From the IMG/VR virus record IMGVR_UViG_3300042879_006196, positions 124,001 through 188,000 of that record: DNA of 64,000 nt; one strand, 5' to 3'. Each line of letters opens with the position of its first letter. The first letter of the stretch is position 1. Position numbers and translations under genes: made by a program. Of the stretch, positions 1,927-60,900 are shown in pieces. The notes under the pieces were generated by a model. The model was not told the origin of the DNA. It searched no databases and worked only from the letters and a program-made list of their open reading frames with translations.

Positions 1927-4031
1927 GCAAAAATCTTAAAAATAAGCAGGCAATTGAACATAAAGAAAAAATGCACCGAGATGCAGCAAAGCTAGATCAG
2001 CTTTGGGCGGGATTAGACGGCGAAGAAGTAAAGGAGATTGTGTACTCAAATAGGTATGAAGTTCCACCACCTGAGCCAAAAGATAAAAGTAAATATAATA
2101 AAAACAATATCGTTGACATTGAAACATTCATCACCCACCCTTACTATTTAAATTTAAGACCGTATCCTTGGCAGATTTTAGCATTAAAATTGTTTTATGC
2201 TGGGTCTGAGGGTAACACGCATTTAGAATTCAATGATACTAAAAAAGACGATGTGCAAGATTGCTCAGGTTGTGTTTGGGAATATGTAGTTGAAAATGAA
2301 AAAAAATGTGTTGAAGCAATAGAAAGAGAGGAGAATTATCAATCTATTTTGTCACCACTTAATTCAAGATGCTTAAAATGCTCCAGGTGCCCTTTAAAAA
2401 CTCGTCAAACTAAATTAGAGTATGAAATAAAGCAAGCTTCTGATAAAGATATTGAATCTAATCTCAGAGATATAATAGAAACTGAAACTGAAGATTTTTT
2501 TCAATCTGAAATGGACTTAATTGATGCTATTCCAGATGAAGCAGTTAAAATGCAGATAAAAAATAAACTCAGAAAGAAATTTCAAGAACTTGTTTTAATA
2601 ATTGGACGACGAGGAAGTAAATCATTTATGACTGTGGCTATGGGTTTATATGAACTTCATAAGTTGCTGTCTATGAAGCACCCACAAAAGAAATTAAATT
2701 TACCTGACTTTCAAGAAATTGTAATTCTTAACGTGGCTAAAAACGAAGATCAAGCTAAAGACTCAATTTTTACTCCCATGAAAAACGCCGCAGTATCATC
2801 TCCATTTTTTCAAAAATATATTGGTGTAGATAATGCTTTGGAGATGAAGTTTTTAACTGAAAATGATTTAGAAGAAAATTCACGAAGAACAGAACGTGGT
2901 TTAACACCCTTGGATGGCACTTTAATTTTAAAATGCGGTTCATCTTCAGCCTCTGGGCTTGTTGGTAAAACCTGTTGGTGTATTATTCTTGATGAGCTTG
3001 CGGCGATGGCAGGTGATAATCCTAATTCTGGGGTAGATAAAAAACTTTACAATGATTTGAAGCCCTCTTTGACAACATTTGGAAAAGAAGGCAAAATAAT
3101 TTGCTTGTCAAACCCTAAGGGTCCATTTGGGCAACTATTTACATTATATAATTCAAGATTGGAAGATGATATGACATTAGTTTTGAAACTTCCAACTTGG
3201 CATATTAATGCTAATGTTGATAAACTATGGCTTGAAGGCGAAAGAAGAAGAGATCCTGTTGAGTTTAATATGCAATATGGTGCGGAATTTGGAACCAACT
3301 CTCAAGATCCATATTTAAGTCCTGAAGATGTAGCTTATGCATTTGAAAATTCATCTAAAACAACAAGAACTGAACAGAGAGAACCTGGTTTAATTGATTA
3401 TTATTGTCATGTCGATCCAGCAAACAGATCAGACTATTATGCCATAGCGATTGTTCATGCAATTCCGACAGGAGAGCAAGATATACAAGGAAGACCAATA
3501 AAAAGATTCATTGTTGACCATATGCAGTTTTGGGCGCCACTAAAAATGAAACAACCTGTACCAATAAGAGAAGTAGAAGAATACATTTTAGAACTTCACC
3601 AAAAGTTCAAATTCAAACAAATTTCTTTTGATCAATGGGGAAGCCCAGAAACTATGCAAAAATTAGAGTCACATGGTTTGCCAGTTGTATTAAAGGTATT
3701 TAATAAAGAATATAAAGACAAAATCTATATGCATCTTCTCGAAACTTTTCGAGATAAAAGAATAGAATTTTATAAAATGTCTGCTGGGAAAGTCAGAGAT
3801 GCTAAAGGTAATATTATGAACATAAACGAAATTCCAGAGGCAAAAGATCAATTTACATTTTTGCAAAAAAAATGGAAAAATGGCAGACAGATAATCGAAG
3901 CTTTGTCTACTTATAAAGACGATTTGTGTGATGCTGTGGCTGCTGCAATTTATGAAAGTAATTCTCAATCTACAGTAGTAAAATCTCTTCCTAGATCAAG
4001 GGTGGCTTATACTGGAAAAGCTTTAAGGTAA
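1923..4031 (+). CDS. terL: Terminase large subunit
   Basis: PYPWQ Q-motif, Walker A IIGRRGSKS, Walker B CIILDE, LSNP coupling motif, RNase H-like nuclease YCHVDPA...FDQW...DDLCDAVA. Confidence 0.92.
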   Translation: MSKNLKNKQAIEHKEKMHRDAAKLDQLWAGLDGEEVKEIVYSNRYEVPPPEPKDKSKYNKNNIVDIETFITHPYYLNLRPYPWQILALKLFYAGSEGNTHLEFNDTKKDDVQDCSGCVWEYVVENEKKCVEAIEREENYQSILSPLNSRCLKCSRCPLKTRQTKLEYEIKQASDKDIESNLRDIIETETEDFFQSEMDLIDAIPDEAVKMQIKNKLRKKFQELVLIIGRRGSKSFMTVAMGLYELHKLLSMKHPQKKLNLPDFQEIVILNVAKNEDQAKDSIFTPMKNAAVSSPFFQKYIGVDNALEMKFLTENDLEENSRRTERGLTPLDGTLILKCGSSSASGLVGKTCWCIILDELAAMAGDNPNSGVDKKLYNDLKPSLTTFGKEGKIICLSNPKGPFGQLFTLYNSRLEDDMTLVLKLPTWHINANVDKLWLEGERRRDPVEFNMQYGAEFGTNSQDPYLSPEDVAYAFENSSKTTRTEQREPGLIDYYCHVDPANRSDYYAIAIVHAIPTGEQDIQGRPIKRFIVDHMQFWAPLKMKQPVPIREVEEYILELHQKFKFKQISFDQWGSPETMQKLESHGLPVVLKVFNKEYKDKIYMHLLETFRDKRIEFYKMSAGKVRDAKGNIMNINEIPEAKDQFTFLQKKWKNGRQIIEALSTYKDDLCDAVAAAIYESNSQSTVVKSLPRSRVAYTGKALR

Positions 4032-4057
4032 AAGATACATTTTTCGAGAAAATAATT

Positions 4058-8066: not shown

Positions 8067-9455
8067 ATGGCAGATAGAGTTTTTCCAAATAATATAAATG
8101 TTGACATGGGTTCTAAAATTACATTCTCAGGAATAGATTGGGGCACTGTTGAAGCAAACATCAAAAATAATAAGTTCGCTAGTGACCAATCAGAAGAAGT
8201 GCAAGCACTTTTAAGAATGGCTAACGAGCAAATGGCTCCAGTTGAACAGACCACTAAAGCGCTTACACCAGAAAAAATAGCACAATACAGACCTAAATTG
8301 ATCGAAGCTTTAGATAAAATTGCAGAAGAAGCTCAAATGGATGATCAAAATAAAGAAAATTTTAAAGCTGAAGTTTTATCTGAATTTGAAAGAAATCCAG
8401 GTGATGAAGAATCAATCAAAAACTCGATTGCTGAATTACAAAAAGCAAATATTATTTCTGCTAACTCAGGAAATAAAATGCAAAGAACAGCTCTTATGAA
8501 AATTTATCTCCTTATGGCTAAAGCAATGGAAGATTTAATGTCTCAAGGCATGTCTGAAGAGGAAGCAAAAGCTGAAATTGAAAAAGATTTTTCAATTCTT
8601 GAAAACTATAGAGACATGTTACCAGAAGACAACTCTAGTCCAAAAGAATTAAAAGATTATTATCCAGATGATTACACTCCTGAATATCCTGAGTCAAAAA
8701 ATGATTTTGCCAACTCAAGAAAAACCAAAAGAGAAGCTATGAAAAAAATTGCATTTACACATCCTAGTCAAATAAGCGCTGAGGCAATTGAAAAAGCTAA
8801 AGCTGCTGGTGACACTAAACTCGTCAACACAATCTTAGCAGCAAGAAAAGCAAACAGACAAAGAATCGCTGCTGCGATAGAAGAAAAAAATGAAGTTTCT
8901 GAAAGAATTGCGCAAAGAAACAATATTTTGAAATTGGCTCAAATGGATGATCTTTTTGATGAGAAAGAAATGATGGATAACACAATGGATGACTCAATGG
9001 ATAACACAATGAACGATCCAATGAATGATCCAATGAAGAAGAAGCCTAGAGTGCCTGGAGATTTATCATTAGACGCAATGCTTCCAGCAGATGAATCTGA
9101 AGCCCCAACTTTAGCTTTCACTTCTCCAACAAAATTCACAAAGGCACAACGAGCATCATTTGCTAAAATTGCAAAATCTTTGGGTATGCCTGACGAATAT
9201 GTTAAAGCAATGTGCACACCAGTGCTTTCCCCTGAGACAGAAAGATTAAACAGAGAAATCAATGAAATTAAAATGTCAAGAGTCTCTGAAAAAACAAAAA
9301 ATTCTTTGATTAAAACTTTAATTAAAGAAGCAAAGCTTTCAACAGAATCAAAAAATGAATTTATCAGATATTGGAATGAAACATTAGGTTATCAAGACAA
9401 ACAGTTTTATAAAGATGTTGCCGCTGATTATGTTGACGGAAAAAAGGTGAACTAA
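8067..9455 (+). CDS. Hypothetical, putative head protein
   Basis: 462-aa ORF; KFAS, KKIA, KLAQ and KEAK motifs; short Met-rich repeat. Confidence 0.6.
   Translation: MADRVFPNNINVDMGSKITFSGIDWGTVEANIKNNKFASDQSEEVQALLRMANEQMAPVEQTTKALTPEKIAQYRPKLIEALDKIAEEAQMDDQNKENFKAEVLSEFERNPGDEESIKNSIAELQKANIISANSGNKMQRTALMKIYLLMAKAMEDLMSQGMSEEEAKAEIEKDFSILENYRDMLPEDNSSPKELKDYYPDDYTPEYPESKNDFANSRKTKREAMKKIAFTHPSQISAEAIEKAKAAGDTKLVNTILAARKANRQRIAAAIEEKNEVSERIAQRNNILKLAQMDDLFDEKEMMDNTMDDSMDNTMNDPMNDPMKKKPRVPGDLSLDAMLPADESEAPTLAFTSPTKFTKAQRASFAKIAKSLGMPDEYVKAMCTPVLSPETERLNREINEIKMSRVSEKTKNSLIKTLIKEAKLSTESKNEFIRYWNETLGYQDKQFYKDVAADYVDGKKVN
8970..9035 (+). repeat. Degenerate 12-bp coding tandem repeat (MDNT-MDDS-MDNT-MNDP-MNDP-M)
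   Basis: atggataacaca/atggatgactca/atggataacaca/atgaacgatcca/atgaatgatcca. Confidence 0.75.
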
Positions 9456-11072: not shown

Positions 11073-12155
11073 ATGAAAAAATTAGCTGGAAATGATGTAA
11101 TTGTATTAATGAAAGCTGCTATGTCAGATAATGCAGTGTTAAAAGAGGCTCAAGCTTTAAGCTCTGATAACTTTGATAATGATGATTTATTAGTGAAATA
11201 CTTTTTCAAATCACATCCCCAAGGTTTTGCCTCAAAAAGTTTTCTTTCAAATAACAGAGTTGCAATTTCTTCATCTATTGATTCTTTAACTAAAATTAAA
11301 AAAGAAATTGTAAATCAAGGCTTAAGAAAAGCACACAATCTGATACAGAACATCAATCATTCAGATAATTTAGCTGTAGAACTAGAAAATTCTGTTAGTA
11401 ATTTTGAAAAAGATTCAAGTTTTCAATTACAAGTTAAAGCATCAAATTTATTGAATTTTTTATCTAAATACATTGATGGTGCTAGTCATAAAGAAGCAGC
11501 TAATCAAGCCTGTAAAAAGGTTAATGCTGGTAAACTTGATGAAGCTGTAGAAGACATTAGAAAAATATTTTCTTCAAAAAATCCAGGCGATAACATCAGA
11601 AAAGCCTTCACTACAGTTAAACAACAAATTGGTGAAGGATTCCAAATGTGTCCAAAAGGCATTTATCAGACAGGTTTTCCTGTTCCTATGGAGATTTCAA
11701 ATTGTAGGCATTATTGCATTGATGCTCGTTTACATCCAGATGGAACTGTGGGATGTAACTATCTTAAGTGGCTTAATGAAAATTTAATTACTCAAGAACA
11801 AGCTTTGAATCTTTTTGATAAAATGGATTACGATAAAGATGAAATTGAGTTTATGAATTTAGATAAAGGCGTAAGAACTAAATTCCCTAAATCAGATGAA
11901 GATTCGCAAGATTTAAGAATTTTGAGAGATGAAAAACTTACTAAAGATATTACTATGAAACCTTGGGAAGAGCAACTAGCAAAACAACATGTAAAAGAAA
12001 ATTCATCTGATTATCGTGATTTAACACCCACTAAAAACAGTATTGTAGCTTCAGACGATGCAATTGAAAAAATACTTTCTGATATTAGAGATGTTTTTGA
12101 TGAAAATGACCTAGACACTCTTGAAGAACAAATTAGAGCTGCAGTGGAGAAATAA
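11073..12155 (+). CDS. Hypothetical phage protein with a Cys cluster
   Basis: MCPK...CRHYCID...GCNY. Confidence 0.6.
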   Translation: MKKLAGNDVIVLMKAAMSDNAVLKEAQALSSDNFDNDDLLVKYFFKSHPQGFASKSFLSNNRVAISSSIDSLTKIKKEIVNQGLRKAHNLIQNINHSDNLAVELENSVSNFEKDSSFQLQVKASNLLNFLSKYIDGASHKEAANQACKKVNAGKLDEAVEDIRKIFSSKNPGDNIRKAFTTVKQQIGEGFQMCPKGIYQTGFPVPMEISNCRHYCIDARLHPDGTVGCNYLKWLNENLITQEQALNLFDKMDYDKDEIEFMNLDKGVRTKFPKSDEDSQDLRILRDEKLTKDITMKPWEEQLAKQHVKENSSDYRDLTPTKNSIVASDDAIEKILSDIRDVFDENDLDTLEEQIRAAVEK

Positions 12156-12522: not shown

Positions 12523-14901
12523 TTGTCTAACAATATAAATTCAATGCCAACATTAGCCTCTGTAATGACAGATGCAGCAAGAAAAGTAGTTGGAAAAACA
12601 CAATCTGGAAATTCCAGCATGAAAGAATCTGGAAGACAATGGGCAGAGCTTAGATTAGCAAAATCAATTGGTGCTTCAAATAGAGGCTATGGCACAATGC
12701 CATCATTCGAGAAATTGGGACAAATGTCTACAGGGGGTATGCTTAATAATACTACCACACAACCTAATTTTTATAGCCCTTTTCTTACTCCTTCTTCTTT
12801 TCAAATTCCTAATACTAGAAAAGAAATTTATTTATGGTCAAACTGGTGGCGATTAAATGAGCCAAAAGTTGCCGCTGGTATTGATTTTTATAAAAATTTT
12901 CCTTTCAACGGTTGGAAATTAGAATGTAAATCGGGAGTAGTAAAAGATTATTTTGAAAAACTAATTGAAAAATTAAATTTTCAAAAAATGTTGCCATTGA
13001 TTTCTGGTGATTATTATCTCTACGGAGATGCTTTTGTATTCACTGAAATTGATTGCCCCCACTGTGGCGGTGGCATGATTGATTTAAAAACTGGAAATGA
13101 ATGTGAGCACAAAGGGGCTTCTTGGAAATCTATGGTCACATTAAATCCAGATTCTGTTCAAATCACAGCAGGCTTTATTACCACTGAGCCTGTATATGCT
13201 TACTTACCTAACGATCAGGAAGTAAGGATTGTAATGGAAAAAAATCCCAAAGAAGTGTATGATAAAATTCCTGATCAAGTCAAAGCAAAAATAATGGCTA
13301 GACAGCCAATCACTTTAAACCCAATTTCTATTCATCATTTCAAGCATGGCTCAGAATACTGGAATGACTATGGTGTATCATTGGTTAAGCCATTAATGGT
13401 CACCTTGGCTTACAAAGATAAACTTAGACAGGCACAATGGCTTATAGCTGAAAGACATATTATACCCACTAAAATTGTAATGGTTGGTGATGATAATCGC
13501 CCTGCATCTCAAGCAGATTTAGATTCTGTTCAAGAGCAGCTTTCAGCTGTCGCTAACGACCCCAATCTTACGTTAGTTGTTCCTCACGCTTTTAAATATG
13601 AATTTGTTGGCGCATCAAGCCAAATATTGAATGTAGCTGCTGAATTTGAGCAATTAGATCAAGAAATACTTGATGGCTTAATGTTAAACAAAGGACTTTT
13701 AAATGGAGAAGGTCCAAACTATGGTAGTGCTCAAGTTGGCTTACTTGCTATGAACGAAAGGCTTGAAAGCTGGCGAAGAGAAATGCAACACTTTATAGAA
13801 CAAAAAATATTCAAGCCTTGTGCAGAATGGAACGGGTTCTATGCTTCTGGGGAAGCTGGTCAAGAAGAGCTCATTTATCCAAAGATTATTTTTGATCCTT
13901 TAAGACTTAAAGATAACACTGGACAGCTTCAAATGATGGTTACCGCACAGCAAAATGGAGTTGTTTCTGCAGAAACTTTAGTCGAAGAATTTGGATTGAA
14001 TTGGGATCAAGAAGTAGAAAGACTGCGTTTCGAACAAGGAATGAATTTTGTAAATGCTCCTGAAGTTATGGATACAGATATGAACATAGGTTTCGGAGGG
14101 GTGACAGGAGCTGGATTTGGTGGCGGTCCTTTAAATCAACCACTTACACCTGGAGCTGAGGGCGGAGACTTGGGAATGGGCGAGATGCCTCCAGCAGGGG
14201 GAGATATTACTGGTGGCGCTCCAGCTACTGCTCCAGCTCCAGAAGCTCCTATGCCACCTGCTACAGCAGATACTATTTATAAACAATATAAATTTGCTTC
14301 AAATCTTGTAAATGAAATCTGTTATAATAGAACTGCTTTAGCTAAATTGGAAGAAAGAAATTATTTGAGTGAAATAGACAGAGAACTTAATGAAAGATTT
14401 GCAGTAACAGGTAGAAGCTATTTTAAAGAAATACCTGTAGACTTAGAGCCAGCAGAACCTTGGAATTGGAAAGGTGCTGGTGTACCAGAAAACTATGAGG
14501 CTGTAAAATTAGTAAAAGCTTCTAAAGTAAAAAACAAGAGCATTATTGGTTACACAGGTTTAGAGAAAAAACTTTATAAACTTATAATGAGTATGCAACC
14601 ACCTTTGGCATTCTACGCTCAATATGAAGCAGGTCCAGGAAAGGAATATATTTTAGACGGTGCTTTTCCACAAATAAAATTAGCGATTGAAGCTGATGGT
14701 GAGATTTGGCATAATAATGAAAACAAAATAAAATCTGACCAGCACAGAGACACAAACTTATCAAGACAAGGATGGACTGTTTTAAGATTTACAGATAAAG
14801 AAATTGAAAGACAGCCAAAAGATGTTGCTATGGTAATAAAACAAGCAATGCAAAAACTTTTAGGCAGTCTTTCAGGTGAACCTGGTGATCAATTTATTTG
14901 A
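12523..14901 (+). CDS. Portal protein with C-terminal DUF559/Vsr-like endonuclease domain
   Basis: Located between terL and the protease; portal-like segments (EPKVAAGIDFY, YYLYGDAFV, IHHFKH...YGVSLVKP); Pro/Gly/Ala linker; C-terminal LDGAFPQIKLAIEADGEIWH...DQHRDTNLSRQGWTVLRF. Confidence 0.85.
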   Translation: MSNNINSMPTLASVMTDAARKVVGKTQSGNSSMKESGRQWAELRLAKSIGASNRGYGTMPSFEKLGQMSTGGMLNNTTTQPNFYSPFLTPSSFQIPNTRKEIYLWSNWWRLNEPKVAAGIDFYKNFPFNGWKLECKSGVVKDYFEKLIEKLNFQKMLPLISGDYYLYGDAFVFTEIDCPHCGGGMIDLKTGNECEHKGASWKSMVTLNPDSVQITAGFITTEPVYAYLPNDQEVRIVMEKNPKEVYDKIPDQVKAKIMARQPITLNPISIHHFKHGSEYWNDYGVSLVKPLMVTLAYKDKLRQAQWLIAERHIIPTKIVMVGDDNRPASQADLDSVQEQLSAVANDPNLTLVVPHAFKYEFVGASSQILNVAAEFEQLDQEILDGLMLNKGLLNGEGPNYGSAQVGLLAMNERLESWRREMQHFIEQKIFKPCAEWNGFYASGEAGQEELIYPKIIFDPLRLKDNTGQLQMMVTAQQNGVVSAETLVEEFGLNWDQEVERLRFEQGMNFVNAPEVMDTDMNIGFGGVTGAGFGGGPLNQPLTPGAEGGDLGMGEMPPAGGDITGGAPATAPAPEAPMPPATADTIYKQYKFASNLVNEICYNRTALAKLEERNYLSEIDRELNERFAVTGRSYFKEIPVDLEPAEPWNWKGAGVPENYEAVKLVKASKVKNKSIIGYTGLEKKLYKLIMSMQPPLAFYAQYEAGPGKEYILDGAFPQIKLAIEADGEIWHNNENKIKSDQHRDTNLSRQGWTVLRFTDKEIERQPKDVAMVIKQAMQKLLGSLSGEPGDQFI

Positions 14902-15190
14902 ATAGATTTTTTAGAGAATTAAAAATTCTACTAAGAAATGATCCAGTGTTGGTTTCAGATTGTGTGTTGGAGTTAACCAAGTTAGAATCAGCATTAACAC
15001 TAGAAGGTTTTTCTATTAAAGGAACATTAACAATCACGTCCATTGTTTCTTCAACAAGATTAAGATTATTTGTTTTGATGTAATCCAGCGCTTCTTGCTT
15101 ACTTTTAAAAACTCGAAGTGCTCGCTTCCCACCTTCTTTGATCACGGAATATTTCCCATCATTTTCTTTTAATCGCACAGAATTATTCAT
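14894..15190 (-). CDS. DUF2188-like small protein (start probably ATG at 15190)
   Basis: DGKYSVIKEGGKRALRVFKSKQEA pattern. Confidence 0.55.
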   Translation of the reverse strand: MNNSVRLKENDGKYSVIKEGGKRALRVFKSKQEALDYIKTNNLNLVEETMDVIVNVPLIEKPSSVNADSNLVNSNTQSETNTGSFLSRIFNSLKNLFK

Positions 15191-23007: not shown

Positions 23008-23057
23008 ATAGGTAGATTGTGTGCTAATTTGTCAACTAAAAATTGTAAAATACAATC

Positions 23058-23309: not shown

Positions 23310-23400
23310 ATTGAACAATGATATCTATGATGTTTTTAGACCATATCTAACAAATATGAAAGAAAATGAGATTGTGTTTGATGAAATATTTTAACAAAAT

Positions 23401-44257: not shown

Positions 44258-44291
44258 ACAATCTATTTAAAGAAAAATGACCTATTAGCCT

Positions 44292-45300: not shown

Positions 45301-45526
45301 ATTACTATTTTACAAAAAACTTCCAAAAAACCTTAAAAAAAATGACCTTTACTGTGTAGGAAAAGTATATATAATTAATACTAATTAAAAACTAAATTAG
45401 AACTAAGGTTTTTTTTTAAATTTATGTATAATGTTAATGAGAATGCCGTCAATTCAAGGAAAAGGGCGTAAATATTCTCACACAATCTGCAAGGGTTTTA
45501 AATTTATATTTTAGAAAAAAATTAGT

Positions 45527-46158: not shown

Positions 46159-46177
46159 GATTGTGTATAATTAATAC

Positions 46178-47197: not shown

Positions 47198-47264
47198 AAT
47201 AAAATAAGAAACTTTTTTAAAGGAAAAACCGTCTAAGATTGTGTAATATAAAAAAGGAACTAAA

Positions 47265-47318
47265 ATGACAAATTCGCTACTCCATTCATATCCAGCCTAC
47301 GCACCCTCATCGGGGTAG
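47265..47318 (+). CDS. Leader peptide of tRNA array 1 (MTNSLLHSYPAYAPSSG)
   Basis: RBS AAGGA; ATG at 47265 to TAG at 47316-47318; codons match the downstream tRNAs (Pro, Tyr, Leu, His, Ala). Confidence 0.8.
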   Translation: MTNSLLHSYPAYAPSSG

Positions 47319-47387
47319 TGGCTCGTTGCGTATTTGACAAGCTACAGAACCCCGAAGGACTCAAATCTTTCGGGGTTTTTTATTTTT
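47294..47387 (+). promoter_or_regulatory. Transcription attenuator 1 (protector/antiterminator/terminator)
   Basis: 1:2 pairs 47294-47306 with 47312-47323; 2:3 pairs TCGGGGT/GTGGCT (47310-47323) with AGCTAC/ACCCCGA (47340-47355); 3:4 is the terminator 47348-47377 plus U-tract. Confidence 0.8.
47348..47387 (+). terminator. Intrinsic terminator upstream of tRNA array 1
   Basis: AACCCCGAAGGA-CTCAAA-TCTTTCGGGGTT followed by a T-rich tract. Confidence 0.88.
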
Positions 47388-47832: not shown

Positions 47833-48150
47833 TTACAAATCATAAAATCTCTTTGGAGTGTAAATATATTTCATAGGCTGAACACCTACCTCGTCAGGTT
47901 GAGTTGTAGGTTCTTCAGCTAATTCGCCTAATACCGCTGGTGGCTCAGGAATAGGGGGATTAATTTGTGCTGGTTCGTTAACAACATTATTTTGTTTACG
48001 ATTATATTCTCTTGCCAATTCTTTACAAGTTTCGCAAGCTCTTTCATCAAATTGCCAGATTGTGTTTCCGCCAGGAAGTTGTTCAATGAAGCATCTACAC
48101 CCTTCATGCACAGGAGGTAAGATTTGTTGTTGTGAATATTTATACCACAC
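47833..48150 (-). CDS. Small protein with a PPxHxxCRC motif (minor-head-protein-like); start probably GTG at 48150
   Basis: (M)WYKYSQQQILPPVHEGCRC...CETC; AGG-N18-TGAA motif upstream; separates the two tRNA arrays. Confidence 0.55.
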   Translation of the reverse strand: MWYKYSQQQILPPVHEGCRCFIEQLPGGNTIWQFDERACETCKELAREYNRKQNNVVNEPAQINPPIPEPPAVLGELAEEPTTQPDEVGVQPMKYIYTPKRFYDL

Positions 48151-48239
48151 AATCTGATTTTCAAGAAAAAAAACAAAAAAACCTAATTTTATAGAACAAA
48201 AAGGAGATTGTGTCGTATAATCATAATAAGGAATTAACA

Positions 48240-48308
48240 ATGAAATTAAATTTGCAGGGCAGTATGGTGGGATGTTTTATTTGGTCAACCCAAGGGGGTA
48301 GTGGCTAG
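48240..48308 (+). CDS. Leader peptide of tRNA array 2 (MKLNLQGSMVGCFIWSTQGGSG)
   Basis: TATAAT at 48215-48220; RBS TAAGGA; ATG at 48240 to TAG at 48306-48308; codons match the downstream tRNAs. Confidence 0.82.
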   Translation: MKLNLQGSMVGCFIWSTQGGSG

Positions 48309-48373
48309 AAACCTGCTGTTAGCAAAAATTTCAACCAAAATCCCTGAAGGCAAAATCTTCAGGGATTTTTTTT
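48282..48373 (+). promoter_or_regulatory. Transcription attenuator 2
   Basis: 1:2 hairpin TGGTCA-ACCC-[AAGG]-GGGT-AG-TGGCTA (48282-48307); G-run/TGG/GAAA (48293-48311) can pair imperfectly with TTTC/CCA/TCCCT (48329-48345); terminator 48337-48373. Confidence 0.72.
48337..48373 (+). terminator. Intrinsic terminator upstream of tRNA array 2
   Basis: AAAATCCCTGAAGG-CAAAA-TCTTCAGGGATTTTTTTT. Confidence 0.9.
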
Positions 48374-48374
48374 A

Positions 48375-48388
48375 TGTTCTTTGACAAT
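48375..48388 (+). promoter_or_regulatory. boxA-like antitermination element (variant GAACATTGACAAT at 47388-47400)
   Basis: TGTTCTTTGACAAT resembles rrn boxA; same relative position before both arrays. Confidence 0.55.
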
Positions 48389-49313: not shown

Positions 49314-49622
49314 TCACGACACAATCTTAATAATATGCGGTTCTGTTTCTGAGATATTGAATATACCATCACCCAATTGATATTTTTTACCTAAATCATC
49401 AATGAAATCCTGAAATTGCGTTTCAGCATTTTCAATCACTTCTTGGTTTTGTGCAAATTCTGCCTGTAGGGATTGCATTTGCTTTTCAGTTTTTCTCATC
49501 ATATCAAATAAATCTGATCTTTTTCCTTTCAGATTAAGAATACCAGCTCTCATTTGGGTATAGTTGTTGAATTCTTCTTTGGAAAGTGCTTTTTCAGATT
49601 GTGTGTCGCTTTTGAACTTCAT
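49314..49622 (-). CDS. Hypothetical coiled-coil protein
   Basis: 102-aa ORF downstream of the endolysin. Confidence 0.55.
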   Translation of the reverse strand: MKFKSDTQSEKALSKEEFNNYTQMRAGILNLKGKRSDLFDMMRKTEKQMQSLQAEFAQNQEVIENAETQFQDFIDDLGKKYQLGDGIFNISETEPHIIKIVS

Positions 49623-49640
49623 AATATTATTTTACAAGAT

Positions 49641-50489: not shown

Positions 50490-50544
50490 AACTTTATTCT
50501 TCTAAATAAAAATTAATTTTCACTTTTTCTTTTATAACTTTAAT

Positions 50545-51090
50545 ATGACTTTGAATTGCAATATTCCACATTTTGAATGTTTTGTTAAAAAAGAATTTCT
50601 TACCAACTTTACACAATCTGATGAGTTGATAAAAGCCAAAGCTTTTGCAGTGTCGAGCACAAGAGGTCAAGTGTTACAGTTTCATGTTTTGACAGAGCAT
50701 GGAGCAATGTTTTCTAAACTTCCAGTGCATGCTTTAGTTCTTAAAAAAGATTATGAAAAAATGGAATTAAATCAGCTTGTCACTTATGATACTTTTAGTT
50801 TTCATTTGTCAAACATTACTTATGATTATTTAAAATATTTGACATGCACATACTTTGCTGGTGATAAACGCGAAAAATATGGGGCTACATATTTTACAAC
50901 AGTTGATTTTTATGATTCCGAGTATGCAGATCACCCTGGTGTCACTAAATGTTGTCATATTTTGTTTTTAGATAATGGCAATATTGCGGCAGCACCAAAC
51001 AATAGAATCCTATGGAACGACACAGGATTAAAGTCAGATGTAACGAAAATTGATTATAAGCCTTTAAATAAAATCTTTACAGTGGAATGA
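50545..51090 (+). CDS. Conserved hypothetical phage protein
   Basis: LNCNIPHFECFV...FHVLTEHGAMFSKLPVHAL...LDNGNIAAAPNNRILW. Confidence 0.6.
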   Translation: MTLNCNIPHFECFVKKEFLTNFTQSDELIKAKAFAVSSTRGQVLQFHVLTEHGAMFSKLPVHALVLKKDYEKMELNQLVTYDTFSFHLSNITYDYLKYLTCTYFAGDKREKYGATYFTTVDFYDSEYADHPGVTKCCHILFLDNGNIAAAPNNRILWNDTGLKSDVTKIDYKPLNKIFTVE

Positions 51091-51872
51091 AAATATTTTT
51101 TGATCATATTCTTTTTCAGCAAACTAATTACAATTTTAATCATACACTTGTATCTGCAATTTTTGAAGAAAATGAATATAATTATGCATTAGAAAATGGA
51201 TGGTTTCCAGATAATTTTTGGATAAATTCATCTACAAGTCATTCAATAAGATGTGAAAAATTGGGCGAATTTGTTTGGTCTCCAATAAGATCTTCTAGAA
51301 TTAAAGTGGAGGATTTTGTACTTGACAAAAAAGATAGAAGATTACTTAAAAATAATATTGATGTAGAAAAGCAAATTGTTTCGCAAATAGATACTGTAGA
51401 AGTGTTTGAAGTTTATAAAAAATATATTTGCGCAAAAGGATTCGATGATTTTAAGGATTCATTAGAAGATTTCAAACATAGTTTTTGCCGAGAAGATTTT
51501 CATTTTTTACTTTACAAACAAAACACAATCTTAATAGGCTTTTGTATTGTGCAACCATTTGGAAATAATCTAGTGTCTTATCAATTTTGTTGGGATTATG
51601 AAAATCCAAAATTAAGTTTGGGAAAATTTTCACAAATTCAAGAAATAGAATATGCTAAATCACTCAACATGAATTATGTTTACATAGGATGCATTGCTGA
51701 AAAAGAAGGAATGTATAAAAGTAATTTTTCTGGATTTGAATATTTTAATGGAAGAGAATGGAGAAAGAAAGATAACTTAATCGAAAAATGGCTTTTGAAT
51801 GATTCAGATTGTGTGAGTATTGACAGATTGTGTGAGTTAGAAAAGGAATACATCAAAGACTACCAGGTTTAA
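51087..51872 (+). CDS. Aminoacyl-tRNA-protein transferase-like (ATE1/Bpt family GNAT fold)
   Basis: ALENGWF...RSSRI...YQFCWDYENPKLSLGKFSQIQEIEYAK...YVYIG...MYKSNF. Confidence 0.75.
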   Translation: MKIFFDHILFQQTNYNFNHTLVSAIFEENEYNYALENGWFPDNFWINSSTSHSIRCEKLGEFVWSPIRSSRIKVEDFVLDKKDRRLLKNNIDVEKQIVSQIDTVEVFEVYKKYICAKGFDDFKDSLEDFKHSFCREDFHFLLYKQNTILIGFCIVQPFGNNLVSYQFCWDYENPKLSLGKFSQIQEIEYAKSLNMNYVYIGCIAEKEGMYKSNFSGFEYFNGREWRKKDNLIEKWLLNDSDCVSIDRLCELEKEYIKDYQV

Positions 51873-51893
51873 CCCATTTTAATTTAAAAATGA

Positions 51894-56591: not shown

Positions 56592-57452
56592 ATGAGCAAA
56601 ATATTTAAAAAAATTGCACAAGGAGATTTTAATTTTAACACTCAAACAAATTCTGCTCAACAGCCATTGGTGTCTGAGTCTAATAAAGATAATGAAGCAC
56701 AAATCTTGTTTGATAAATTAACAGCTCTATCAAGCAAATTGGAAAAACAAAAAGCACAAGCTTCAACTCTGAAATCTAATTATGAGTTATTTAAAACAAG
56801 CACTCCATTTGATGATTCTGAAGTGCCCTCTGCGATTTCTCCATGTTCATCAATAATAAAATTTAATAAATTTATTTCAAGTGATGATTATATTCAAAAA
56901 AATACTGAATATATATCTGGGCTGCAAGAATTATTAAATATATTGAAAGTAATTTTAACTGAAGCCAGTACATTAAAAACAAGTTATGATTCAGCTATTT
57001 CAGCAGCTGGAATTAAAACAAGTGAGTTTGAAAAGGCTAATCCTGAAACTTTGATTCAATCAATCAAAAATGAAGAAACAAAAACACAAACAGAAGTAAT
57101 AATTGCAAACAAAACTTTAAAAATGTTTCAAATTACATTACCTTTCAAACAAAGATATGTAAAAGTATTAGCTCGTTTATGCAGAGCGCAAAACATAAAG
57201 AAAAAACATGATGCTTTAAACTTAAAGTACGTGAGTGATCTTAGGAACTTAAAACTAGGCTATGATGACGCTATAAAAATCATAAAACAATGGCAGGCAG
57301 CTTTTCTTTCACAAGTGCCAAAACAAAAAATCACTTCTAAAGAGCAAGCAGAACTAATGTCAGAAAGTTTTGTTCAAGCTATATTAGAAATAGAAACAGA
57401 AAAAAGAAAACTTGTTTTTGAAAGATTTAAATCTACATTTGGAAGAAAATGA
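56592..57452 (+). CDS. Hypothetical helical protein
   Basis: Starts MSKIFKKIAQ. Confidence 0.6.
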   Translation: MSKIFKKIAQGDFNFNTQTNSAQQPLVSESNKDNEAQILFDKLTALSSKLEKQKAQASTLKSNYELFKTSTPFDDSEVPSAISPCSSIIKFNKFISSDDYIQKNTEYISGLQELLNILKVILTEASTLKTSYDSAISAAGIKTSEFEKANPETLIQSIKNEETKTQTEVIIANKTLKMFQITLPFKQRYVKVLARLCRAQNIKKKHDALNLKYVSDLRNLKLGYDDAIKIIKQWQAAFLSQVPKQKITSKEQAELMSESFVQAILEIETEKRKLVFERFKSTFGRK

Positions 57453-57964
57453 CACAATCTGAAGCCTTCTTAGAATTTGAAGATTTGGGTATAAATGATT
57501 ATATTTTTGAATCAGATAATATTTACTGTGAAAAGCATATGCCTGATTTTAAATATACTGCAGGCGATTTAATAAAGATTAAAAAACCAACAACACAATC
57601 TTACAAAAAAATTTACAAAGATGTTGATTATTATATTGCAAAACAAGAAAAAGTGGTCAAAGAAATAAAATTCACCGAACCTAAAGAAGAAAAAATTGAA
57701 AAAATATCAAACGATGTAAATGAAAAAATAAATAACATCACAAATCACATAAATAAGCAGTTAGACAAATCTAACAAAATGAACGAAGAACAAATTAAAG
57801 AGCTCGAAAAAAATATTGGTAGTTTGTCACAAAGTAAATATATTTCTGATTTTGATTTAAAAAAATTAGAAAATAGAATTATTGATTCAACACAGGACAT
57901 AGTGGATGATTTACAAGAAAAGATAAGTAAACAAACAAAATTTATTGAAAATTTTTTGAAATGA
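57449..57964 (+). CDS. Hypothetical coiled-coil protein
   Basis: 171-aa ORF. Confidence 0.55.
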   Translation: MTQSEAFLEFEDLGINDYIFESDNIYCEKHMPDFKYTAGDLIKIKKPTTQSYKKIYKDVDYYIAKQEKVVKEIKFTEPKEEKIEKISNDVNEKINNITNHINKQLDKSNKMNEEQIKELEKNIGSLSQSKYISDFDLKKLENRIIDSTQDIVDDLQEKISKQTKFIENFLK

Positions 57965-57968
57965 AACT

Positions 57969-60900
57969 ATGCCAGATCAATATGTAAATCCTACTGTCAA
58001 ACCATGCACAGGAAGTTATACTTGGGTTCCTTCTGTTCCGCCAAACATTGGTGGAATAAATCCATTAATTGGATTCAAAAATTTAATTATCGATAAAGGA
58101 TCATTTCGCAATTATTTTGTATCACCAAAAACAAATCCTGATGCAAATGCGCCTGTAATTTTATTGGGAAAAAATACTAACACTGGAAATAGATATTCGC
58201 CAATTATAAATGCCACAAGACCACTAGATTTAAACAATAGAGTGCTTGTGGCTAATGACGATAATGTAGTGTGCAACTACACCTCTGATAAAAATCTGAT
58301 TGAGTTTGAGTTTTCTGCAAGTGAATCCGTAAAACCATTATCTTGTATTCAAATTACTTATGATCTTTCAGCATTTGATCCAAACATCAAGGCAGATGAT
58401 TCTATTATTGAAATTTATGGAGTAGATTCCGCTGGAAAAGAGACAAAAATCACTGACAAAATTTATCTCACAAGGCAAAGAGATTCGGAAACCGAAATCA
58501 ATCTGGAATATGCTCAACAGTTGGATGATACTAATGTAAAATTTACCACAAAATATTTCAAAACAGCTAGTGAAATTTTAAATAGAGATAACTTCCCGAA
58601 GTTTAAAAAAATAATTTTTAGGGCTGTTTCAACATACAAAGATTCTTTTATTATTTTTGTATTGAAAAAAATAATGTTTTTCACTGCAGATCGTGTGAAT
58701 TTTAGATATGATTTAGATGAGAAGCAATTACCATGTAATGCAATTGGCTATTCAATGTTTGTGAATGGTAGTTTTTATCCTGAGATTGGATATCAAAGTG
58801 TTACAGGCGTAATTGGTGGAACAATTGGTGCTACAGGATCTCCTACAGTTTCAAAAGGAGCTGAATCTTGGCCGCCAGGTAATAGATTTACCTCTAATAT
58901 ACATGTAAAATTATTTAACCCAGAGTTTAGAACAAATTCTCCAGGATTTGCACATTCGTTAAATCTTCATTTATTAATTGTATCTTTTCCTGCTTTTGGA
59001 GAATTTGGTAATTCAGTGCTACCAGGAGTTTTACATCCTTATTTTGCTGTCATTGTAGGACCAACCCCTTTCACGCAGCAGATGATTTTTTATGGAAATT
59101 CAGTGGTTCAGGTTGGAAAAAAAACTTTAGCTGTAATTCCTTCTGCCACCTACAAGGGTATCACTGGTCAAATTGAAGTGAGTCGTATTCCTGGGAGTAA
59201 AAAAATACTCACTTATGAAAAGGGTGCAAATTTTGTTTTCAAAAATCAATTTTACTATGAAAGTTTGGGAATAACAACAGCAGAAATTTTTACAAATAGT
59301 TATTTGGATGAGCTGGGAATTCCATCTAATTCAGAGGCATACAATGGTTCACTACCTAGAGGGTCATCTACTCTACAGGCGCAGGAAGCAACTGTTGCTT
59401 TAAGAAATGTTAAACCTTATACTTTTTCATACACAACATATCTTACTAACAAGCCAAATTTGTATGAAATTTTTACTAAAAGTGAACCTTGTTTAATTTT
59501 TAAATGTTCAAATTCAGCTGGATTTACTGCAAGTACGTTTCAGCAACCTGGGTTTTTTAGCGCGGCTATAAAAGGTAGAGTTCTTGATACGCCAGGTTTG
59601 TTTGATACAAAGCTTATATTTAGAGTATTTACTGAAAGAAAAAGCGCGGAAAAAGTAGATTTTACATCCCCTTATCTATTAAATCACAGTTTCAAAATTA
59701 TAGATTCTGGCACACAGGATTCAAAATTGATTCTTGATCAATTTAATTCTTCATGGGATTTTACAAATGTTTTGGTTTCTGGTAATTTATCTGCAAATGA
59801 GCAAAGAATTGAAGTGTCGCAAATTATTAACCCATCTGAGCAAGATTTAAAAAATTTCGTTATAGATCAAAATCCAGAATATGACATTTATTGTGCAATT
59901 TATGCTTTTTCTACTCCAAATGATGTTTTTGCTAATTATGATTTGAAAAAGTATACATCTTTGGACTTGCCATTAGTTTCATTTACAATTGCAGCAGATT
60001 TTGTTTTAACATTGCCAATTTATTATCAAAAGTCATTTTCAAATGGAGGATTTTTAGAAGCTCAAAATGATCAAGGGGCATATGGGTCATATACACCTGA
60101 TACTTCAGCGTACACAGCAGTGACTAATTTATATAATGGGAAACCTGTTAAGGTTGATAGATTTTATAATAATGTATTAAATGAAGTAAGTGGATATTCG
60201 CAGCTTTTTACCTTAGATAGCGAAACTGAAGGGAAATCCACTGAATTCTTTTTAGAATTTTTTAATTCAACAGTCAGTAGAGCAGATTTTTTAATATTGT
60301 TTGACGAAACATCAAGAGCTAAAATTAATTCAGGAAACTGGAAATTAGAAATAGATTTTGAAATCAATGACATTTCTTATTTGGATAATACTTTTATGAA
60401 ATTTGAAATAGATTTGATTAATTCTATCACTTCAAATTTAGTTTTAAAAATTGCTTCATCACCTTATCAAAAGATCGCACCTAAATCTATAATTGAAGAT
60501 ATTGAAATACCATTCTTTTTGCCTTTTTCTGAAAATAAGATTGTGTTGAAGTTGTTTATAAAAAATAATAAAAATAATGGTTTTTTGAAAATAAATAAAC
60601 TTTCACTTACTCAGCAAACATTAGAATACTTTGATTACACAAGACGACTACCACAAACTGCTCCTTTAAATTTCTACGAAGACTTGCCAATACAACCTTC
60701 GTCCTATGTCGGGGGTTGCTCATCATTTGCTTTGTATTTAGATTTGCCTTCTTCGGGGACAATTCTATATGATCCTAGTCCCAGTGGTTCAGGCTTGCCA
60801 ATCAGTGGAGCAATTTACAGTCCGACATGGGTAGTCGAATTACCTGAACAAATGGAATTAAATTATAGAGGAAATATTAATGATAGTTTATTTCCCACAA

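What the first reader, a model, noticed from the sequence alone, without database searches (positions are those of the whole stretch)
2035..60546. 9-mer AGATTGTGT strongly over-represented on both strands
SEEN by manual scan (a lower bound): 35 exact copies. AGATTGTGT starts at 2035, 14957, 18531, 23014, 23369, 29699, 30442, 31538, 34355, 39730, 44971, 46158, 47236, 48057, 48205, 49596, 51806, 51825 and 60538. ACACAATCT starts at 8827, 11333, 12598, 24637, 26269, 27034, 27763, 30914, 44256, 45480, 48147, 49319, 50611, 51523, 57452 and 57593. A base-composition estimate at about 30% GC predicts about one copy. It occurs in many frames (TQS, HNL, TI, EIV, DCV, RLC) and between genes, so it is not a protein motif. 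Many copies lie near gene ends, density peaks at 44-52 kb, and one copy sits just upstream of each tRNA-leader -10 region. I saw none in tnpB or the prepilin gene. INFERENCE: it could be a dispersed cis-signal such as a binding site for a genome-organising or protective protein, a Chi-like or self mark, or a repressor/stoperator-type site.
Basis: partly seen in the sequence, partly recalled or inferred. Interest (0 to 1): 0.8.

Follow-up and report, generated by a model that had tools for sequence, protein, structure and literature searches.

The report
Dispersed 9-base word in huge phage
A 347-kb uncultured phage carries roughly one copy per kilobase of the word (TC)AGATTGTGT, placed mostly between genes and inside promoters, which most likely marks the binding sites of one DNA-binding regulator acting across the whole genome.

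Summary
The window holds 35 exact copies of AGATTGTGT (19 on +, 16 on -) against about 0.9 expected. A shuffle that keeps each protein sequence and each gene's codon usage gives 3.4 copies inside genes; 25 are observed.

The window is part of IMGVR_UViG_3300042879_006196, a 347-kb phage contig. It has TerL, portal, its own sigma factor, rIIA/rIIB and 15 tRNAs in the window, with no close cultured relative.

Across about 128 kb of this phage I counted 167 copies. The site is sharp: each one-mismatch variant occurs 8 times or fewer. It extends only to TCAGATTGTGT. It is seven times denser between genes than inside them. Relatives at about 70% DNA identity keep 8 of 20 alignable sites, against about 1.4 expected.

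A subset sits at fixed promoter positions. It also forms direct pairs 10-12 bp apart and opens each of about 70 tandem mini-ORFs.

No strand polarity was seen along the genome, and no sampled bacterial genome is enriched for it.

Best reading: operator or stoperator-like sites of an unidentified, probably phage-encoded, DNA-binding protein (confidence about 0.5). Chi-like, uptake-signal, iteron and RNA-signal readings fit less well.

The parts
2035..2043 (+). site inside terL (1923-4031), sense, frame xAG ATT GTG T
   Evidence: not kept in relatives A/B/C
8827..8835 (-). site deep inside gene 8067-9455, antisense
   Evidence: kept exactly in relative A
11333..11341 (-). site inside gene 11073-12155, antisense
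   Evidence: not kept in A
12598..12606 (-). site 75 nt into the portal ORF (12523-14901), antisense
14957..14965 (+). site 56 nt after the portal stop, effectively intergenic, sense to flanking + genes
18531..18539 (+). site deep inside the 1402-aa gene 15245-19453, sense
23014..23022 (+). intergenic site just after a terminator hairpin, 36 nt before gene 23058; followed by gcTAATTT
23369..23377 (+). intergenic site between convergent genes (23309 | 23447)
24637..24645 (-). site in the divergent region 24431-24732, inside a 73-aa ORF (24484-24705) whose sequence looks FeoA-like by eye, antisense; followed by gttGATAAT
   Evidence: a FeoA Pfam hit exists among the ORFs but was not assigned to a member
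26269..26277 (-). site 14 nt into gene 26255-26881, at a gene junction, antisense
   Evidence: kept exactly in relative A
27034..27042 (-). site in the nucleotidyl-transferase gene 26977-27843, antisense
   Evidence: kept in A
27763..27771 (-). site 72 nt before the end of the same gene, at a convergent boundary
   Evidence: kept in A
29699..29707 (+). site 53 nt before the end of gene 29224-29760, sense
30442..30450 (+). site near the convergent boundary 30321 | 30318, antisense in ORF 30318-30596
30914..30922 (-). site inside gene 30618-31082, sense
31538..31546 (+). site inside gene 31079-32236, antisense
34355..34363 (+). site inside the 859-aa gene 33896-36475, antisense
39730..39738 (+). 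site deep inside the 1574-aa gene 37340-42064, antisense
44256..44264 (-). site at the junction of genes 44292-44966 and 43583-44257, sense
44971..44979 (+). site in the last codons of gene 44968-45300, 5 nt before the next start codon, antisense
45480..45488 (-). site in the divergent intergenic region 45301-45526, pointing at gene 44968-45300
46158..46166 (+). site overlapping a TATAAT box, 12 nt before the ATG of gene 46178-47197
47236..47244 (+). site 2 nt upstream of TATAAA; promoter of leader RNA 1
47255..47385 (+). short leader transcript ending in terminator 47346-47379, ahead of tRNA array 1 (47411-47831)
   Evidence: transcript ends inferred
48057..48065 (+). site inside a small Cys-rich ORF on the minus strand between the tRNA arrays, antisense
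48147..48155 (-). site 2 nt upstream of TATAAA on the minus strand; divergent partner of 48205
48205..48213 (+). site 2 nt upstream of TATAAT; promoter of leader RNA 2
48224..48378 (+). short leader transcript ending in terminator 48337-48369, ahead of tRNA array 2 (48399-49310)
   Evidence: transcript ends inferred
49319..49327 (-). site in the last codons of gene 49314-49622, 9 nt after tRNA-Trp, at a convergent boundary
49596..49604 (+). site 18 nt into gene 49314-49622, at a gene junction, antisense
50611..50619 (-). site 66 nt into gene 50545-51090, pointing at the divergent amidase gene 49641-50489
51523..51531 (-). site inside gene 51087-51872, antisense
51806..51833 (+). direct pair of sites 19 bp apart (51806, 51825) at the 3' end of gene 51087-51872, at a convergent boundary
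57452..57460 (-). site directly after the start codon of gene 57449-57964 (ATG ACACAATCT), at a gene junction
57593..57601 (-). site inside gene 57449-57964, antisense
60538..60546 (+). site deep inside the 1411-aa gene 57969-62204, sense

Best explanation
(TC)AGATTGTGT is the recognition site of one sequence-specific DNA-binding protein. That protein is probably encoded by the phage and binds as a monomer or as side-by-side monomers. It controls transcription across the genome.

At promoters the word lies in the spacer just upstream of the -10 box (about -15 to -23), in either orientation. In several early promoters a second, inverted copy lies just upstream of the -35-like T-tract (about -37 to -45). 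A protein bound at either place would block or remodel RNA polymerase.

The many copies in short intergenic spacers and inside genes would act as roadblocks to elongating polymerase, as a sink that sets the free concentration of the regulator, or both. This is how the operator and stoperator sites of Cluster A mycobacteriophages work.

Shown here: the word's enrichment, sharpness, placement and conservation. Inferred: that a protein binds it, which protein, and whether it represses or activates.
For: Enrichment and sharpness
- Exact-word enrichment is about 40-fold and survives a protein- and codon-preserving null: 25 observed against 3.4.
- Each one-mismatch variant has 8 or fewer copies against 35 exact.
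- Flanks carry information only at -2 T (67%) and -1 C (59%). That is the footprint of a single small recognition site, not of a mobile element.

Placement
- Density is 4.0 per kb in intergenic DNA against 0.56 per kb in CDS.
- 18 of 35 window sites lie within 80 bp of a gene boundary (p = 6e-6).
- Site centres are 3.4 times enriched in the 60 nt before start codons.

Promoter geometry
- AGATTGTGT lies within 4 nt upstream of (or overlapping by one base) a TATAAT/TATAAA box at window 46158, 47236, 48147(-) and 48205, and at L113 816, L113 4612, L091 4928 and L091 9496 (ahead of tRNA-Asp/Asn/Thr).
- The reversed form ACACAATCT-GAT-TATAAT lies in the spacer of the early promoter family CCAGGTTTAACA...TATAAT.
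- Inverted pairs AGATTGTGT-N12/13-ACACAATCT bracket the T-tract of two early promoters.

Cooperative layouts
- Direct pairs lie 10, 11, 12 and 12 bp apart in this phage and in relatives B and C.
- A cluster of 10 copies sits just upstream of a word-plus-TATAAT promoter.

Conservation
- Relatives at about 70% nucleotide identity keep 8 of 20 alignable sites exactly, against about 1.35 expected. Four of the eight are antisense inside genes, which argues for a DNA-level rather than an RNA-level reading.

Orientation
- Between co-directional genes, 25 sites are sense and 9 antisense (p = 0.009; 17:7 without the tandem cluster).
- All of the roughly 70 mini-ORF copies are sense.
- The antisense excess inside window genes (19:8) is explained by coding cost. 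Two of the three sense frames need a Cys codon, and 6 of the 8 sense sites use the one frame that does not.

Not a host word
- No enriched bacterial genome appeared among 120 genome hits.
- The recently acquired tnpB in the window has no copy.

The defining traits of stoperators are taken from PMC9283540.
Against: - No binding protein was found. Pfam, PHROGs, NCBIfam and Atlas searches of about 110 ORFs gave only one sequence-specific DNA binder, a sigma-70-family factor. Its expected geometry does not fit the word.
- Orientation is only a tendency, not the strict rule seen for L5-type stoperators. Inside promoters the word works in both orientations.
- About 10 window copies lie deep inside long genes, where a regulator is not obviously needed.
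- Relative C has only 1 copy in 20 kb of structural genes, so the intragenic load is not a fixed trait of the clade.
- No repressor, integrase or other sign of a temperate lifestyle was seen in the sampled 128 kb.
- Only about 37% of the genome was sampled.
- There is no experimental evidence of any kind.
Confidence: 0.5

Rival explanations
1. Promoter-activator box. The word is the binding site of an activator, or of a sigma-appropriating factor, that switches on a middle class of promoters lacking a -35 box. This would resemble the 9-bp MotA box of T4. Copies elsewhere would be silent by-products or decoys.
For: - The word-plus-TATAAT promoters at 47236, 48147, 48205 and L113 816 have no recognisable -35 hexamer.
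- Three of the four (47236, 48205, L113 816) appear to drive small non-coding RNAs, and the similar L091 9496 promoter sits ahead of a tRNA cluster. In T4, such genes are middle-mode targets.
- The phage has T4-like traits: rIIA/rIIB, clamp and clamp loader, and TATAAAT-type putative late promoters.
- Sites 31-60 nt upstream of start codons are 8:1 sense.
Against: - Only about 15-20% of copies are next to a -10 box.
- The distance to the -10 box varies from -1 to +4 nt, and both orientations occur at the same place. That fits steric occlusion better than a fixed activator-polymerase contact.
- The box would be centred near -19, not -30 as for MotA.
- Conserved intragenic copies are left unexplained.
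Confidence: 0.15
2. Replication or partition sites. The word is an iteron or DnaA-box-like site of a phage initiator or centromere-binding protein. The dense clusters would mark an origin or centromere, and dispersed copies would titrate the protein.
For: - It is an asymmetric 9-mer like a DnaA box.
- A 46-bp x 3.7 tandem repeat holds two copies per unit at 10-bp phasing, followed by inverted copies and hairpins (L113 368-790).
- About 70 further tandem copies lie next to it.
- Copies overlap promoters, as DnaA boxes do.
Against: - No initiator, ParB, ParR or TubR-like gene was seen near the clusters.
- The 46-bp unit reads as a degenerate mini-ORF of the neighbouring family rather than a classical iteron.
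- DnaA boxes are not strongly over-represented genome-wide (my own knowledge).
- The seven-fold intergenic bias and the promoter-fixed positions point to transcription.
Confidence: 0.1
3. Chi-like or self-mark signal. The word is read by a host or phage nuclease/helicase (RecBCD/AddAB type) and protects or marks phage DNA.
For: - It is G/T-rich and C-free, like known Chi sequences (my own knowledge).
- Density is about 1 per kb and the word is present inside genes in whatever frame tolerates it.
- A run of about 70 same-strand copies could shield one flank.
- The window encodes a RusA-like resolvase.
Against: - There is no strand polarity: 21+:19- over 72 kb and 10+:10- over another 20.6 kb. 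The one-strand run is explained by the mini-ORF family.
- At 9-11 nt it is longer than known Chi sites.
- Helically phased tandem pairs and fixed positions inside promoters have no role in a single-strand scanning signal.
- The seven-fold intergenic bias is not expected.
Confidence: 0.07
4. RNA-level signal. AGAUUGUGU, or its complement ACACAAUCU, acts in transcripts. It could be a processing site, a translational operator near start codons, or a seed for pairing between early RNAs rich in one form and late mRNAs rich in the other.
For: - Copies cluster at gene junctions and near start codons.
- Early-region copies are mostly sense, including all mini-ORF copies. Late-gene mRNAs mostly carry the complement (19 of 27).
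- In two paralogous early genes (starts at L091 4247 and 4693) the word lies between the ribosome-binding site and the ATG.
Against: - Copies directly upstream of -10 boxes are not part of those transcripts.
- Both orientations occupy the same promoter position.
- Tandem DNA phasing of 10-12 bp points to a DNA-level reading.
- Site centres are not enriched just after start codons (3 observed, 3.4 expected).
- The sense/antisense split inside genes follows coding cost.
Confidence: 0.07
5. Host-derived or enzyme-driven word. It could be a DNA-uptake sequence of the host, or the target of a nicking, modifying or mismatch-repair enzyme whose bias drives the word up. One candidate is the Vsr-like DUF559 domain fused to the portal.
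For: - The reverse complement ACACAATCTGA ends in TCTGA, as Neisseria-type uptake sequences do (resemblance recalled from memory only).
- The phage encodes secretin-like and prepilin-like proteins, a Mom-like protein and a DUF559 nuclease-like domain.
Against: - None of 120 bacterial genome hits shows dispersed enrichment, and they spread over many phyla.
- Promoter-fixed geometry and tandem phasing are unexplained.
- Nicks on both strands at 1 per kb would fragment the genome.
Confidence: 0.05

Closest known systems
Operator and stoperator sites of the Cluster A mycobacteriophage (L5-type) immunity repressor
   Same: - A short asymmetric word repeated across a phage genome at about 0.5-1 per kb.
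- Found both inside promoters and in short spaces between genes.
- Orientation tends to follow transcription (25:9 between co-directional genes).
- Single copies suggest monomer binding. Traits of the known system are from PMC9283540.
   Different: - 9-11 bp rather than 13 bp.
- Orientation is a bias, not a rule, and both orientations are used in promoters.
- About 40% of non-array copies lie inside genes.
- Helically phased tandem pairs, and a roughly 70-unit array in mini-ORFs.
- The carrier is a 347-kb phage with T4-like traits and no sign of lysogeny.
- No homologue of the L5-type repressor was found.
MotA box of T4 middle promoters (my own knowledge)
   Same: - A 9-bp asymmetric box that accompanies a -10 element in promoters lacking a -35 box.
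- It drives tRNA and early/middle genes in a large lytic phage.
- This phage shares rIIA/rIIB, clamp, clamp loader and TATAAAT-like putative late promoters.
   Different: - The box is centred near -19 rather than -30, with variable spacing and either orientation.
- Most copies are not at promoters.
- No MotA/AsiA homologue was seen in the sampled part.
DnaA boxes and plasmid/phage iterons (my own knowledge)
   Same: - An asymmetric 9-mer with a sharp consensus.
- Closely spaced direct repeats in a cluster, copies overlapping promoters, and scattered single copies.
   Different: - A different sequence from TTATCCACA.
- About 40-fold genome-wide over-representation.
- A strong intergenic bias.
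- No initiator gene nearby.
Chi sites and DNA-uptake sequences (USS/DUS) (my own knowledge)
   Same: - A short exact word kept at about 1 per kb.
- Tolerated inside genes in the cheapest reading frames and enriched between genes.
- Positions partly conserved with turnover.
   Different: - No replication- or end-related polarity (against Chi).
- No enriched host genome found (against USS/DUS).
- Fixed promoter positions and 10-12-bp tandem pairs.
Dispersed asymmetric operators of the phage P1 C1 repressor (my own knowledge)
   Same: One regulator with many asymmetric single sites spread over a large phage genome, including a cluster upstream of a regulatory locus.
   Different: - P1 operators are 17 bp, about 0.2 per kb, and essentially all at promoters.
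- P1 is temperate.

Membership tests
L5-type operator/stoperator network | Many copies of one short asymmetric word spread over the phage genome | tested here: met
   35 copies in 64 kb and 167 in about 128 kb. The word is non-palindromic and each one-mismatch variant has 8 or fewer copies.
L5-type operator/stoperator network | Sites lie in promoters and in short intergenic spaces | tested here: met
   4.0 per kb intergenic against 0.56 per kb in CDS. Several copies sit at fixed promoter positions. However, 48 of 90 non-array copies are still inside genes.
L5-type operator/stoperator network | Orientation strictly follows the direction of transcription | tested here: not met
   Between co-directional genes 25 sense to 9 antisense. 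In CDS 20 to 28. Both orientations occur in promoter spacers. This is a bias only.
L5-type operator/stoperator network | A cognate repressor (HTH plus a second DNA-binding domain) encoded by the phage | tested here: inconclusive
   None was found among about 110 ORFs covering about 37% of the genome.
L5-type operator/stoperator network | Bound sites stop transcription initiation and elongation | not testable with these tools
   Needs binding and reporter assays.
Chi-like sequence | Strand polarity relative to replication direction or DNA ends | tested here: not met
   21+:19- over 72 kb and 10+:10- over 20.6 kb. The only one-strand run is the mini-ORF array.
Chi-like sequence | Recognised by a RecBCD/AddAB-type enzyme of the host | not testable with these tools
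   The host is unknown.
DNA-uptake sequence (USS/DUS) | The same word is enriched throughout the host chromosome | tested here: inconclusive
   120 genome hits for close direct pairs spread over many phyla. None has more than 3 separate clusters in 8 kb.
T4 MotA-box middle promoter | Box centred near -30 at a fixed 11-13 bp from the -10 element, in one orientation | tested here: not met
   The word ends -1 to +4 nt from the -10 box (centre about -19) and occurs in both orientations.
-35 element of the phage sigma factor | A conserved -10-type element about 16-18 bp downstream of the word | tested here: not met
   81 aligned sites show no information downstream beyond a faint T excess at +16/+17.
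Iteron / DnaA-box origin | Phased direct repeats in one noncoding cluster next to an initiator gene | tested here: inconclusive
   A phased cluster is present (L113 368-830). No initiator was recognised nearby.
Mobile repeat (MITE/REP-like) | Conserved flanks or terminal inverted repeats beyond the core | tested here: not met
   Flanks are uninformative beyond 2 nt.

The most novel reading that the evidence does not exclude
The word is the address label of a genome-wide timing circuit in a huge phage.

One early-made regulator is soaked up by hundreds of copies. These include a roughly 13-kb bank of about 70 tandem mini-ORFs that each begin with the word. As the genome replicates, the number of sites outgrows the supply of regulator. 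Promoters that carry the word (small RNAs, tRNAs and a subset of early genes) then switch state.

This would be a replication-counting developmental clock built from a dispersed 9-mer, with no described counterpart in phages.
Probability: 0.12. Interest if true: 0.85.

Novelty: new variant of a known kind. Interest (0 to 1): 0.62.

Why it matters
Huge phages are known almost only from metagenomes, and how they schedule several hundred genes is largely unknown.

A single exact word marks promoters, gene junctions and a large tandem array. That gives a direct, testable handle on a global regulator:
- The word can be used as bait to find the protein.
- It can be used to sort promoters into classes.
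- It can be used to recognise members of this clade in sequence data.

If the stoperator-like reading is right, this style of control would extend from about 50-kb temperate actinophages to a 347-kb phage with T4-like traits.

Tried and rejected
**Searches that found nothing useful**
- Megablast of 20 kb against cultured phages gave no match. The best cultured TerL hit is 27% identical.
- A full-text search for the word and its complement returned only primer sequences.
- Rfam on the window gave only tRNAs. Rfam on the array locus L113 gave nothing.

**Host-word test**
- A genome-collection scan for close direct pairs found no enriched genome.

**Relative D (L005)**
- It has zero copies, which I first took to mean the word is absent from that phage. 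I rejected this, because relative C has only one copy in the same structural genes.
- Two attempts to fetch more of D failed.

**Sequence-level ideas rejected**
- Extended -10 reading: the TG of the word is 1-2 nt out of register.
- -35 element of the phage sigma factor: no downstream -10 signal.
- Relic of the mini-ORF family: dispersed copies prefer T at -2 where the mini-ORFs have A, and they share nothing else with them.
- Comparison by eye with DnaA, IHF, CRP, PhoP and WalR consensus sequences recalled from memory gave no match. These were leads only, not tests.

**Antisense bias inside genes**
- Reading it as a functional polarity was rejected in favour of coding cost, namely avoidance of Cys codons.

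**Search for the binding protein**
- Pfam, PHROGs and NCBIfam on about 110 ORFs, and Atlas look-ups of the two 92-aa genes that follow the site cluster, gave no candidate.
- Small proteins behind double-site promoters were translated and none looks like an HTH or ribbon-helix-helix protein.

**Operators' notes in the finding**
- No tool called read laying was offered.

Full report
**Observation**

A pattern search reproduces all 35 copies at the coordinates and strands given (19 on +, 16 on -) and finds no others. Dinucleotide-preserving shuffles give 0.87 copies on average and never more than 4. A count of all k-mers shows it is the commonest 9-mer by a wide margin. The runners-up are either overlaps of the same word or A/T-rich low-complexity words with 21 copies or fewer.

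The word is sharp. Each single-base variant has at most 8 copies against 35 exact.

- A shuffle of synonymous codons keeps every protein sequence and each gene's codon usage. It gives 3.4 +/- 1.8 copies inside genes (maximum 10 in 1000 shuffles), against 25 observed.
- Shuffling codon order gives 0.7.
- Markov models of order 3 to 5 give 1 to 6.

**What the sequence is**

The window is bases 124001-188000 of IMGVR_UViG_3300042879_006196, a 347,392-bp viral contig.

Genes recognised in the window or just upstream of it:

| Feature | Location |
|---|---|
| Large terminase | 1923-4031 |
| Mu-type portal with a C-terminal DUF559 nuclease-like domain | 12523-14901 |
| 15 tRNA genes in two arrays | 47411-49310 |
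| Barnase-type RNase, amidase, RusA-like resolvase | 45736-52283 |
| Prepilin-like protein | 23447-24430 |
| tnpB fragment | about 8-661, minus strand |
| Sigma-70-family factor, 184 aa | L001 6596-7147, just upstream of the window |
| Clamp-loader and sliding-clamp domains | not assigned to a specific ORF |

Elsewhere on the genome lie rIIA, rIIB, IF3, a tRNA synthetase and a Mom-like protein. The best cultured TerL match is 27% identical. This is therefore an uncultured huge phage with some T4-like traits. Only four related contigs exist in IMG/VR, labelled A-D here.

**Extent of the word**

By fetching other parts of the same phage I sampled about 128 kb and counted 167 copies.

Aligning 81 non-redundant copies shows information only at the two bases before the word (T 67%, C 59%) and nothing else within 30 nt either side. 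The unit is therefore TCAGATTGTGT. It is not a mobile element or a larger repeat.

Relatives A, B and C, at about 70% nucleotide identity, are also enriched. Of 20 sites that can be aligned, 8 are kept exactly, where about 1.35 would be kept by chance. Other sites are gained or lost. Four of the eight conserved sites are antisense inside genes.

Relative D has none in 13.8 kb. This is not informative, because relative C has only one copy in the same 20 kb of structural genes.

A scan of one genome per bacterial species for close direct pairs returned 120 hits across many phyla, and none showed dispersed enrichment.

**Placement**

- In the window, 18 of 35 copies lie within 80 bp of a gene or tRNA-array boundary, against 17.8% expected (p = 6e-6).
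- Using database gene calls for two further loci, density is 4.0 per kb between genes and 0.56 per kb inside them.
- Site centres are 3.4 times enriched in the 60 nt before start codons but not just after them.
- Copies deep inside long genes are still over-represented: about 10 in the window, where fewer than one copy is expected in the whole window.
- The antisense excess inside window genes (19:8) has a simple cause. In the sense strand two of the three frames need a Cys codon, and 6 of the 8 sense copies use the one frame that avoids it.
- Between co-directional genes the word is mostly sense: 25:9 (p = 0.009), or 17:7 without one tandem cluster.
- Along the genome there is no strand polarity: 21+:19- over 72 kb and 10+:10- over another 20.6 kb.

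**Promoter geometry**

A subset of copies sits at fixed promoter positions.

- AGATTGTGT lies 2 nt upstream of TATAAA/TATAAT at 47236, 48147(-) and 48205, and overlaps a TATAAT box at 46158. It lies within 4 nt upstream of (or overlaps by one base) TATAAT/TATATT at four sites in the early region. One of those is directly ahead of tRNA-Asp/Asn/Thr.
- The promoters at 47236 and 48205 have no -35 hexamer. They drive leaders of about 110-130 nt that end in strong terminators. The tRNA arrays that follow have their own TTGACA-type promoters.
- The early region uses a promoter family, TTTTCCAGGTTTAACA-N8/9-TATAAT, with the ATG a few bases after the -10 box. The word occupies the variable spacer in some members, in either orientation.
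- In two early promoters a second, inverted copy lies just upstream of the T-tract, giving AGATTGTGT-N12/13-ACACAATCT.
- Direct pairs 10, 11, 12 and 12 bp apart occur in this phage and in relatives B and C.
- Only about 15-20% of copies are promoter-associated.

**The clusters**

Upstream of one word-plus-TATAAT promoter lies a cluster of 10 copies. It includes a 46-bp x 3.7 tandem repeat with two copies per unit.

Next to it lie two blocks totalling about 13 kb. They hold about 70 tandem mini-ORFs of 45-75 codons. Each begins ATGATTAATAC-AGATTGTGT-G, and all are on the same strand.

Their bodies are 12-nt repeats:
- AGGTG occurs 200 times on one strand and 4 times on the other.
- The strand is 31% G and 10% C.
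- Val is GTG in 78% of cases, against 19% elsewhere in the phage.

The exact 20-mer start occurs 52 times in this contig and in no other IMG/VR contig. Whether these are proteins, one RNA or a DNA-level bank of sites is unresolved.

**Interpretation**

These features together are what one expects of the site of a small sequence-specific DNA-binding protein that acts on transcription:
- a sharp, asymmetric, stand-alone word;
- a seven-fold bias to intergenic DNA;
- fixed positions in the promoter spacer and just upstream of the -35 region;
- use in either orientation at the same promoter position;
- helically phased tandem pairs;
- a cluster in front of a regulated promoter;
- site-level conservation with turnover.

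The closest described system is the operator/stoperator network of Cluster A mycobacteriophages. There a monomeric repressor binds more than twenty 13-bp asymmetric sites in promoters and short intergenic spaces and blocks initiation and elongation (PMC9283540).

The present case differs in several ways. The word is shorter. Orientation is only a bias. Many copies are intragenic. There is a large tandem bank. The carrier is a huge phage with no sign of lysogeny. No cognate protein was found. It therefore works like that system but cannot be filed as a member of it. I put about 0.5 on this reading. That figure leaves open whether the protein represses or activates.

**Rivals**

- **MotA-box-like activator site (0.15).** It fits the promoters that lack a -35 box. 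It does not fit the variable spacing, the dual orientation, or the 80% of copies away from promoters.
- **Iterons or a centromere (0.10).** This fits the phased cluster but lacks a partner gene and does not explain the intergenic bias.
- **Chi-like signal (0.07).** It is disfavoured by the absence of polarity and by the promoter geometry.
- **RNA-level signal (0.07).** It is disfavoured by copies upstream of -10 boxes and by conserved antisense copies.
- **Host uptake word, nick site or modification site (0.05).** It has only weak and indirect support.

**Limits**

- Only about 37% of the genome was read.
- Gene calls in the window are my own longest-ORF calls.
- The host is unknown.
- Nothing here is experimental.

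Noticed in passing
L265 about 11250-14850; L265 18930 to L257 8250 (same phage, outside the window): About 70 tandem mini-ORFs (45-75 aa), each starting MINTDCV... Their bodies are 12-nt (x-Q-V-W) repeats. AGGTG occurs 200 times on one strand. The strand is 31% G and 10% C, and codon usage is unlike the rest of the phage. The two blocks are split by rIIA-like, DUF6745 and 145-aa genes. The exact 20-mer start is unique to this contig in IMG/VR.
   Followed up: partly
L113 836-1132: A region of about 300 nt lies between a word-plus-TATAAT promoter and a strong terminator. It folds better than shuffles (z = -2.8) and has no Rfam match. It may be a non-coding RNA and begins with a 14-codon ORF.
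   Followed up: partly
window 47255-47385 and 48224-48378: Two short leader transcripts lie ahead of the two tRNA arrays. They share GGGGTAGTGGCT and each ends in a 14-bp-stem terminator. The tRNA arrays then have their own TTGACA-type promoters (47393-47398, 48381-48386).
   Followed up: partly
L091, L065, L113, L257 (early region, outside the window): There are about 20 copies of an early promoter family, TTTTCCAGGTTTAACA-N8/9-TATAAT, with the ATG only 3-5 nt after the -10 box. This suggests leaderless or near-leaderless mRNAs. None occurs in the window.
   Followed up: partly
L091 5316, 8366, 8970; L113 700-830 and 1140-1640: A second short word, TTTCGAG, recurs in the same promoter-spacer position as the 9-mer and in nearby noncoding DNA. 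It may be the site of another factor.
   Followed up: no
window 12523-14901 (residues 681-776): The portal protein carries a C-terminal DUF559 / REase_MTES_1575 (Vsr-like nuclease fold) domain, an unusual fusion.
   Followed up: no
L001 6596-7147 (window -1482 to -931): A phage-encoded sigma-70-family factor (184 aa, regions 2 and 4) lies just upstream of the structural genes. TATAAAT-like boxes precede several late genes (15245, 21364, 26977). One conserved copy of the 9-mer lies inside the sigma gene.
   Followed up: partly
L263 20530-21834 (relative C): A LAGLIDADG homing-endonuclease gene is inserted after a gene of the structural block. It is absent from this phage and carries 5 copies of the word in 1.3 kb, all antisense.
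   Followed up: partly
L259 1-9085; window 23447-24430, 45736-46158, 51087-51872: Unusual cargo for a phage: a class I tRNA synthetase, IF3, a secretin-like protein, a 327-aa prepilin-like protein, a barnase-type RNase, an arginyl-tRNA-protein-transferase-like protein, NAMPT, a Mom-like protein, and at least two tnpB copies. The tnpB on L259 has one copy of the word; the one in the window has none.
   Followed up: no
window 47833-48240, minus strand: A small Cys-rich ORF (HEGCRC...CETC) lies between the two tRNA arrays. It is driven by the minus-strand word-plus-TATAAA promoter at 48147. Its start codon is unclear.
   Followed up: no
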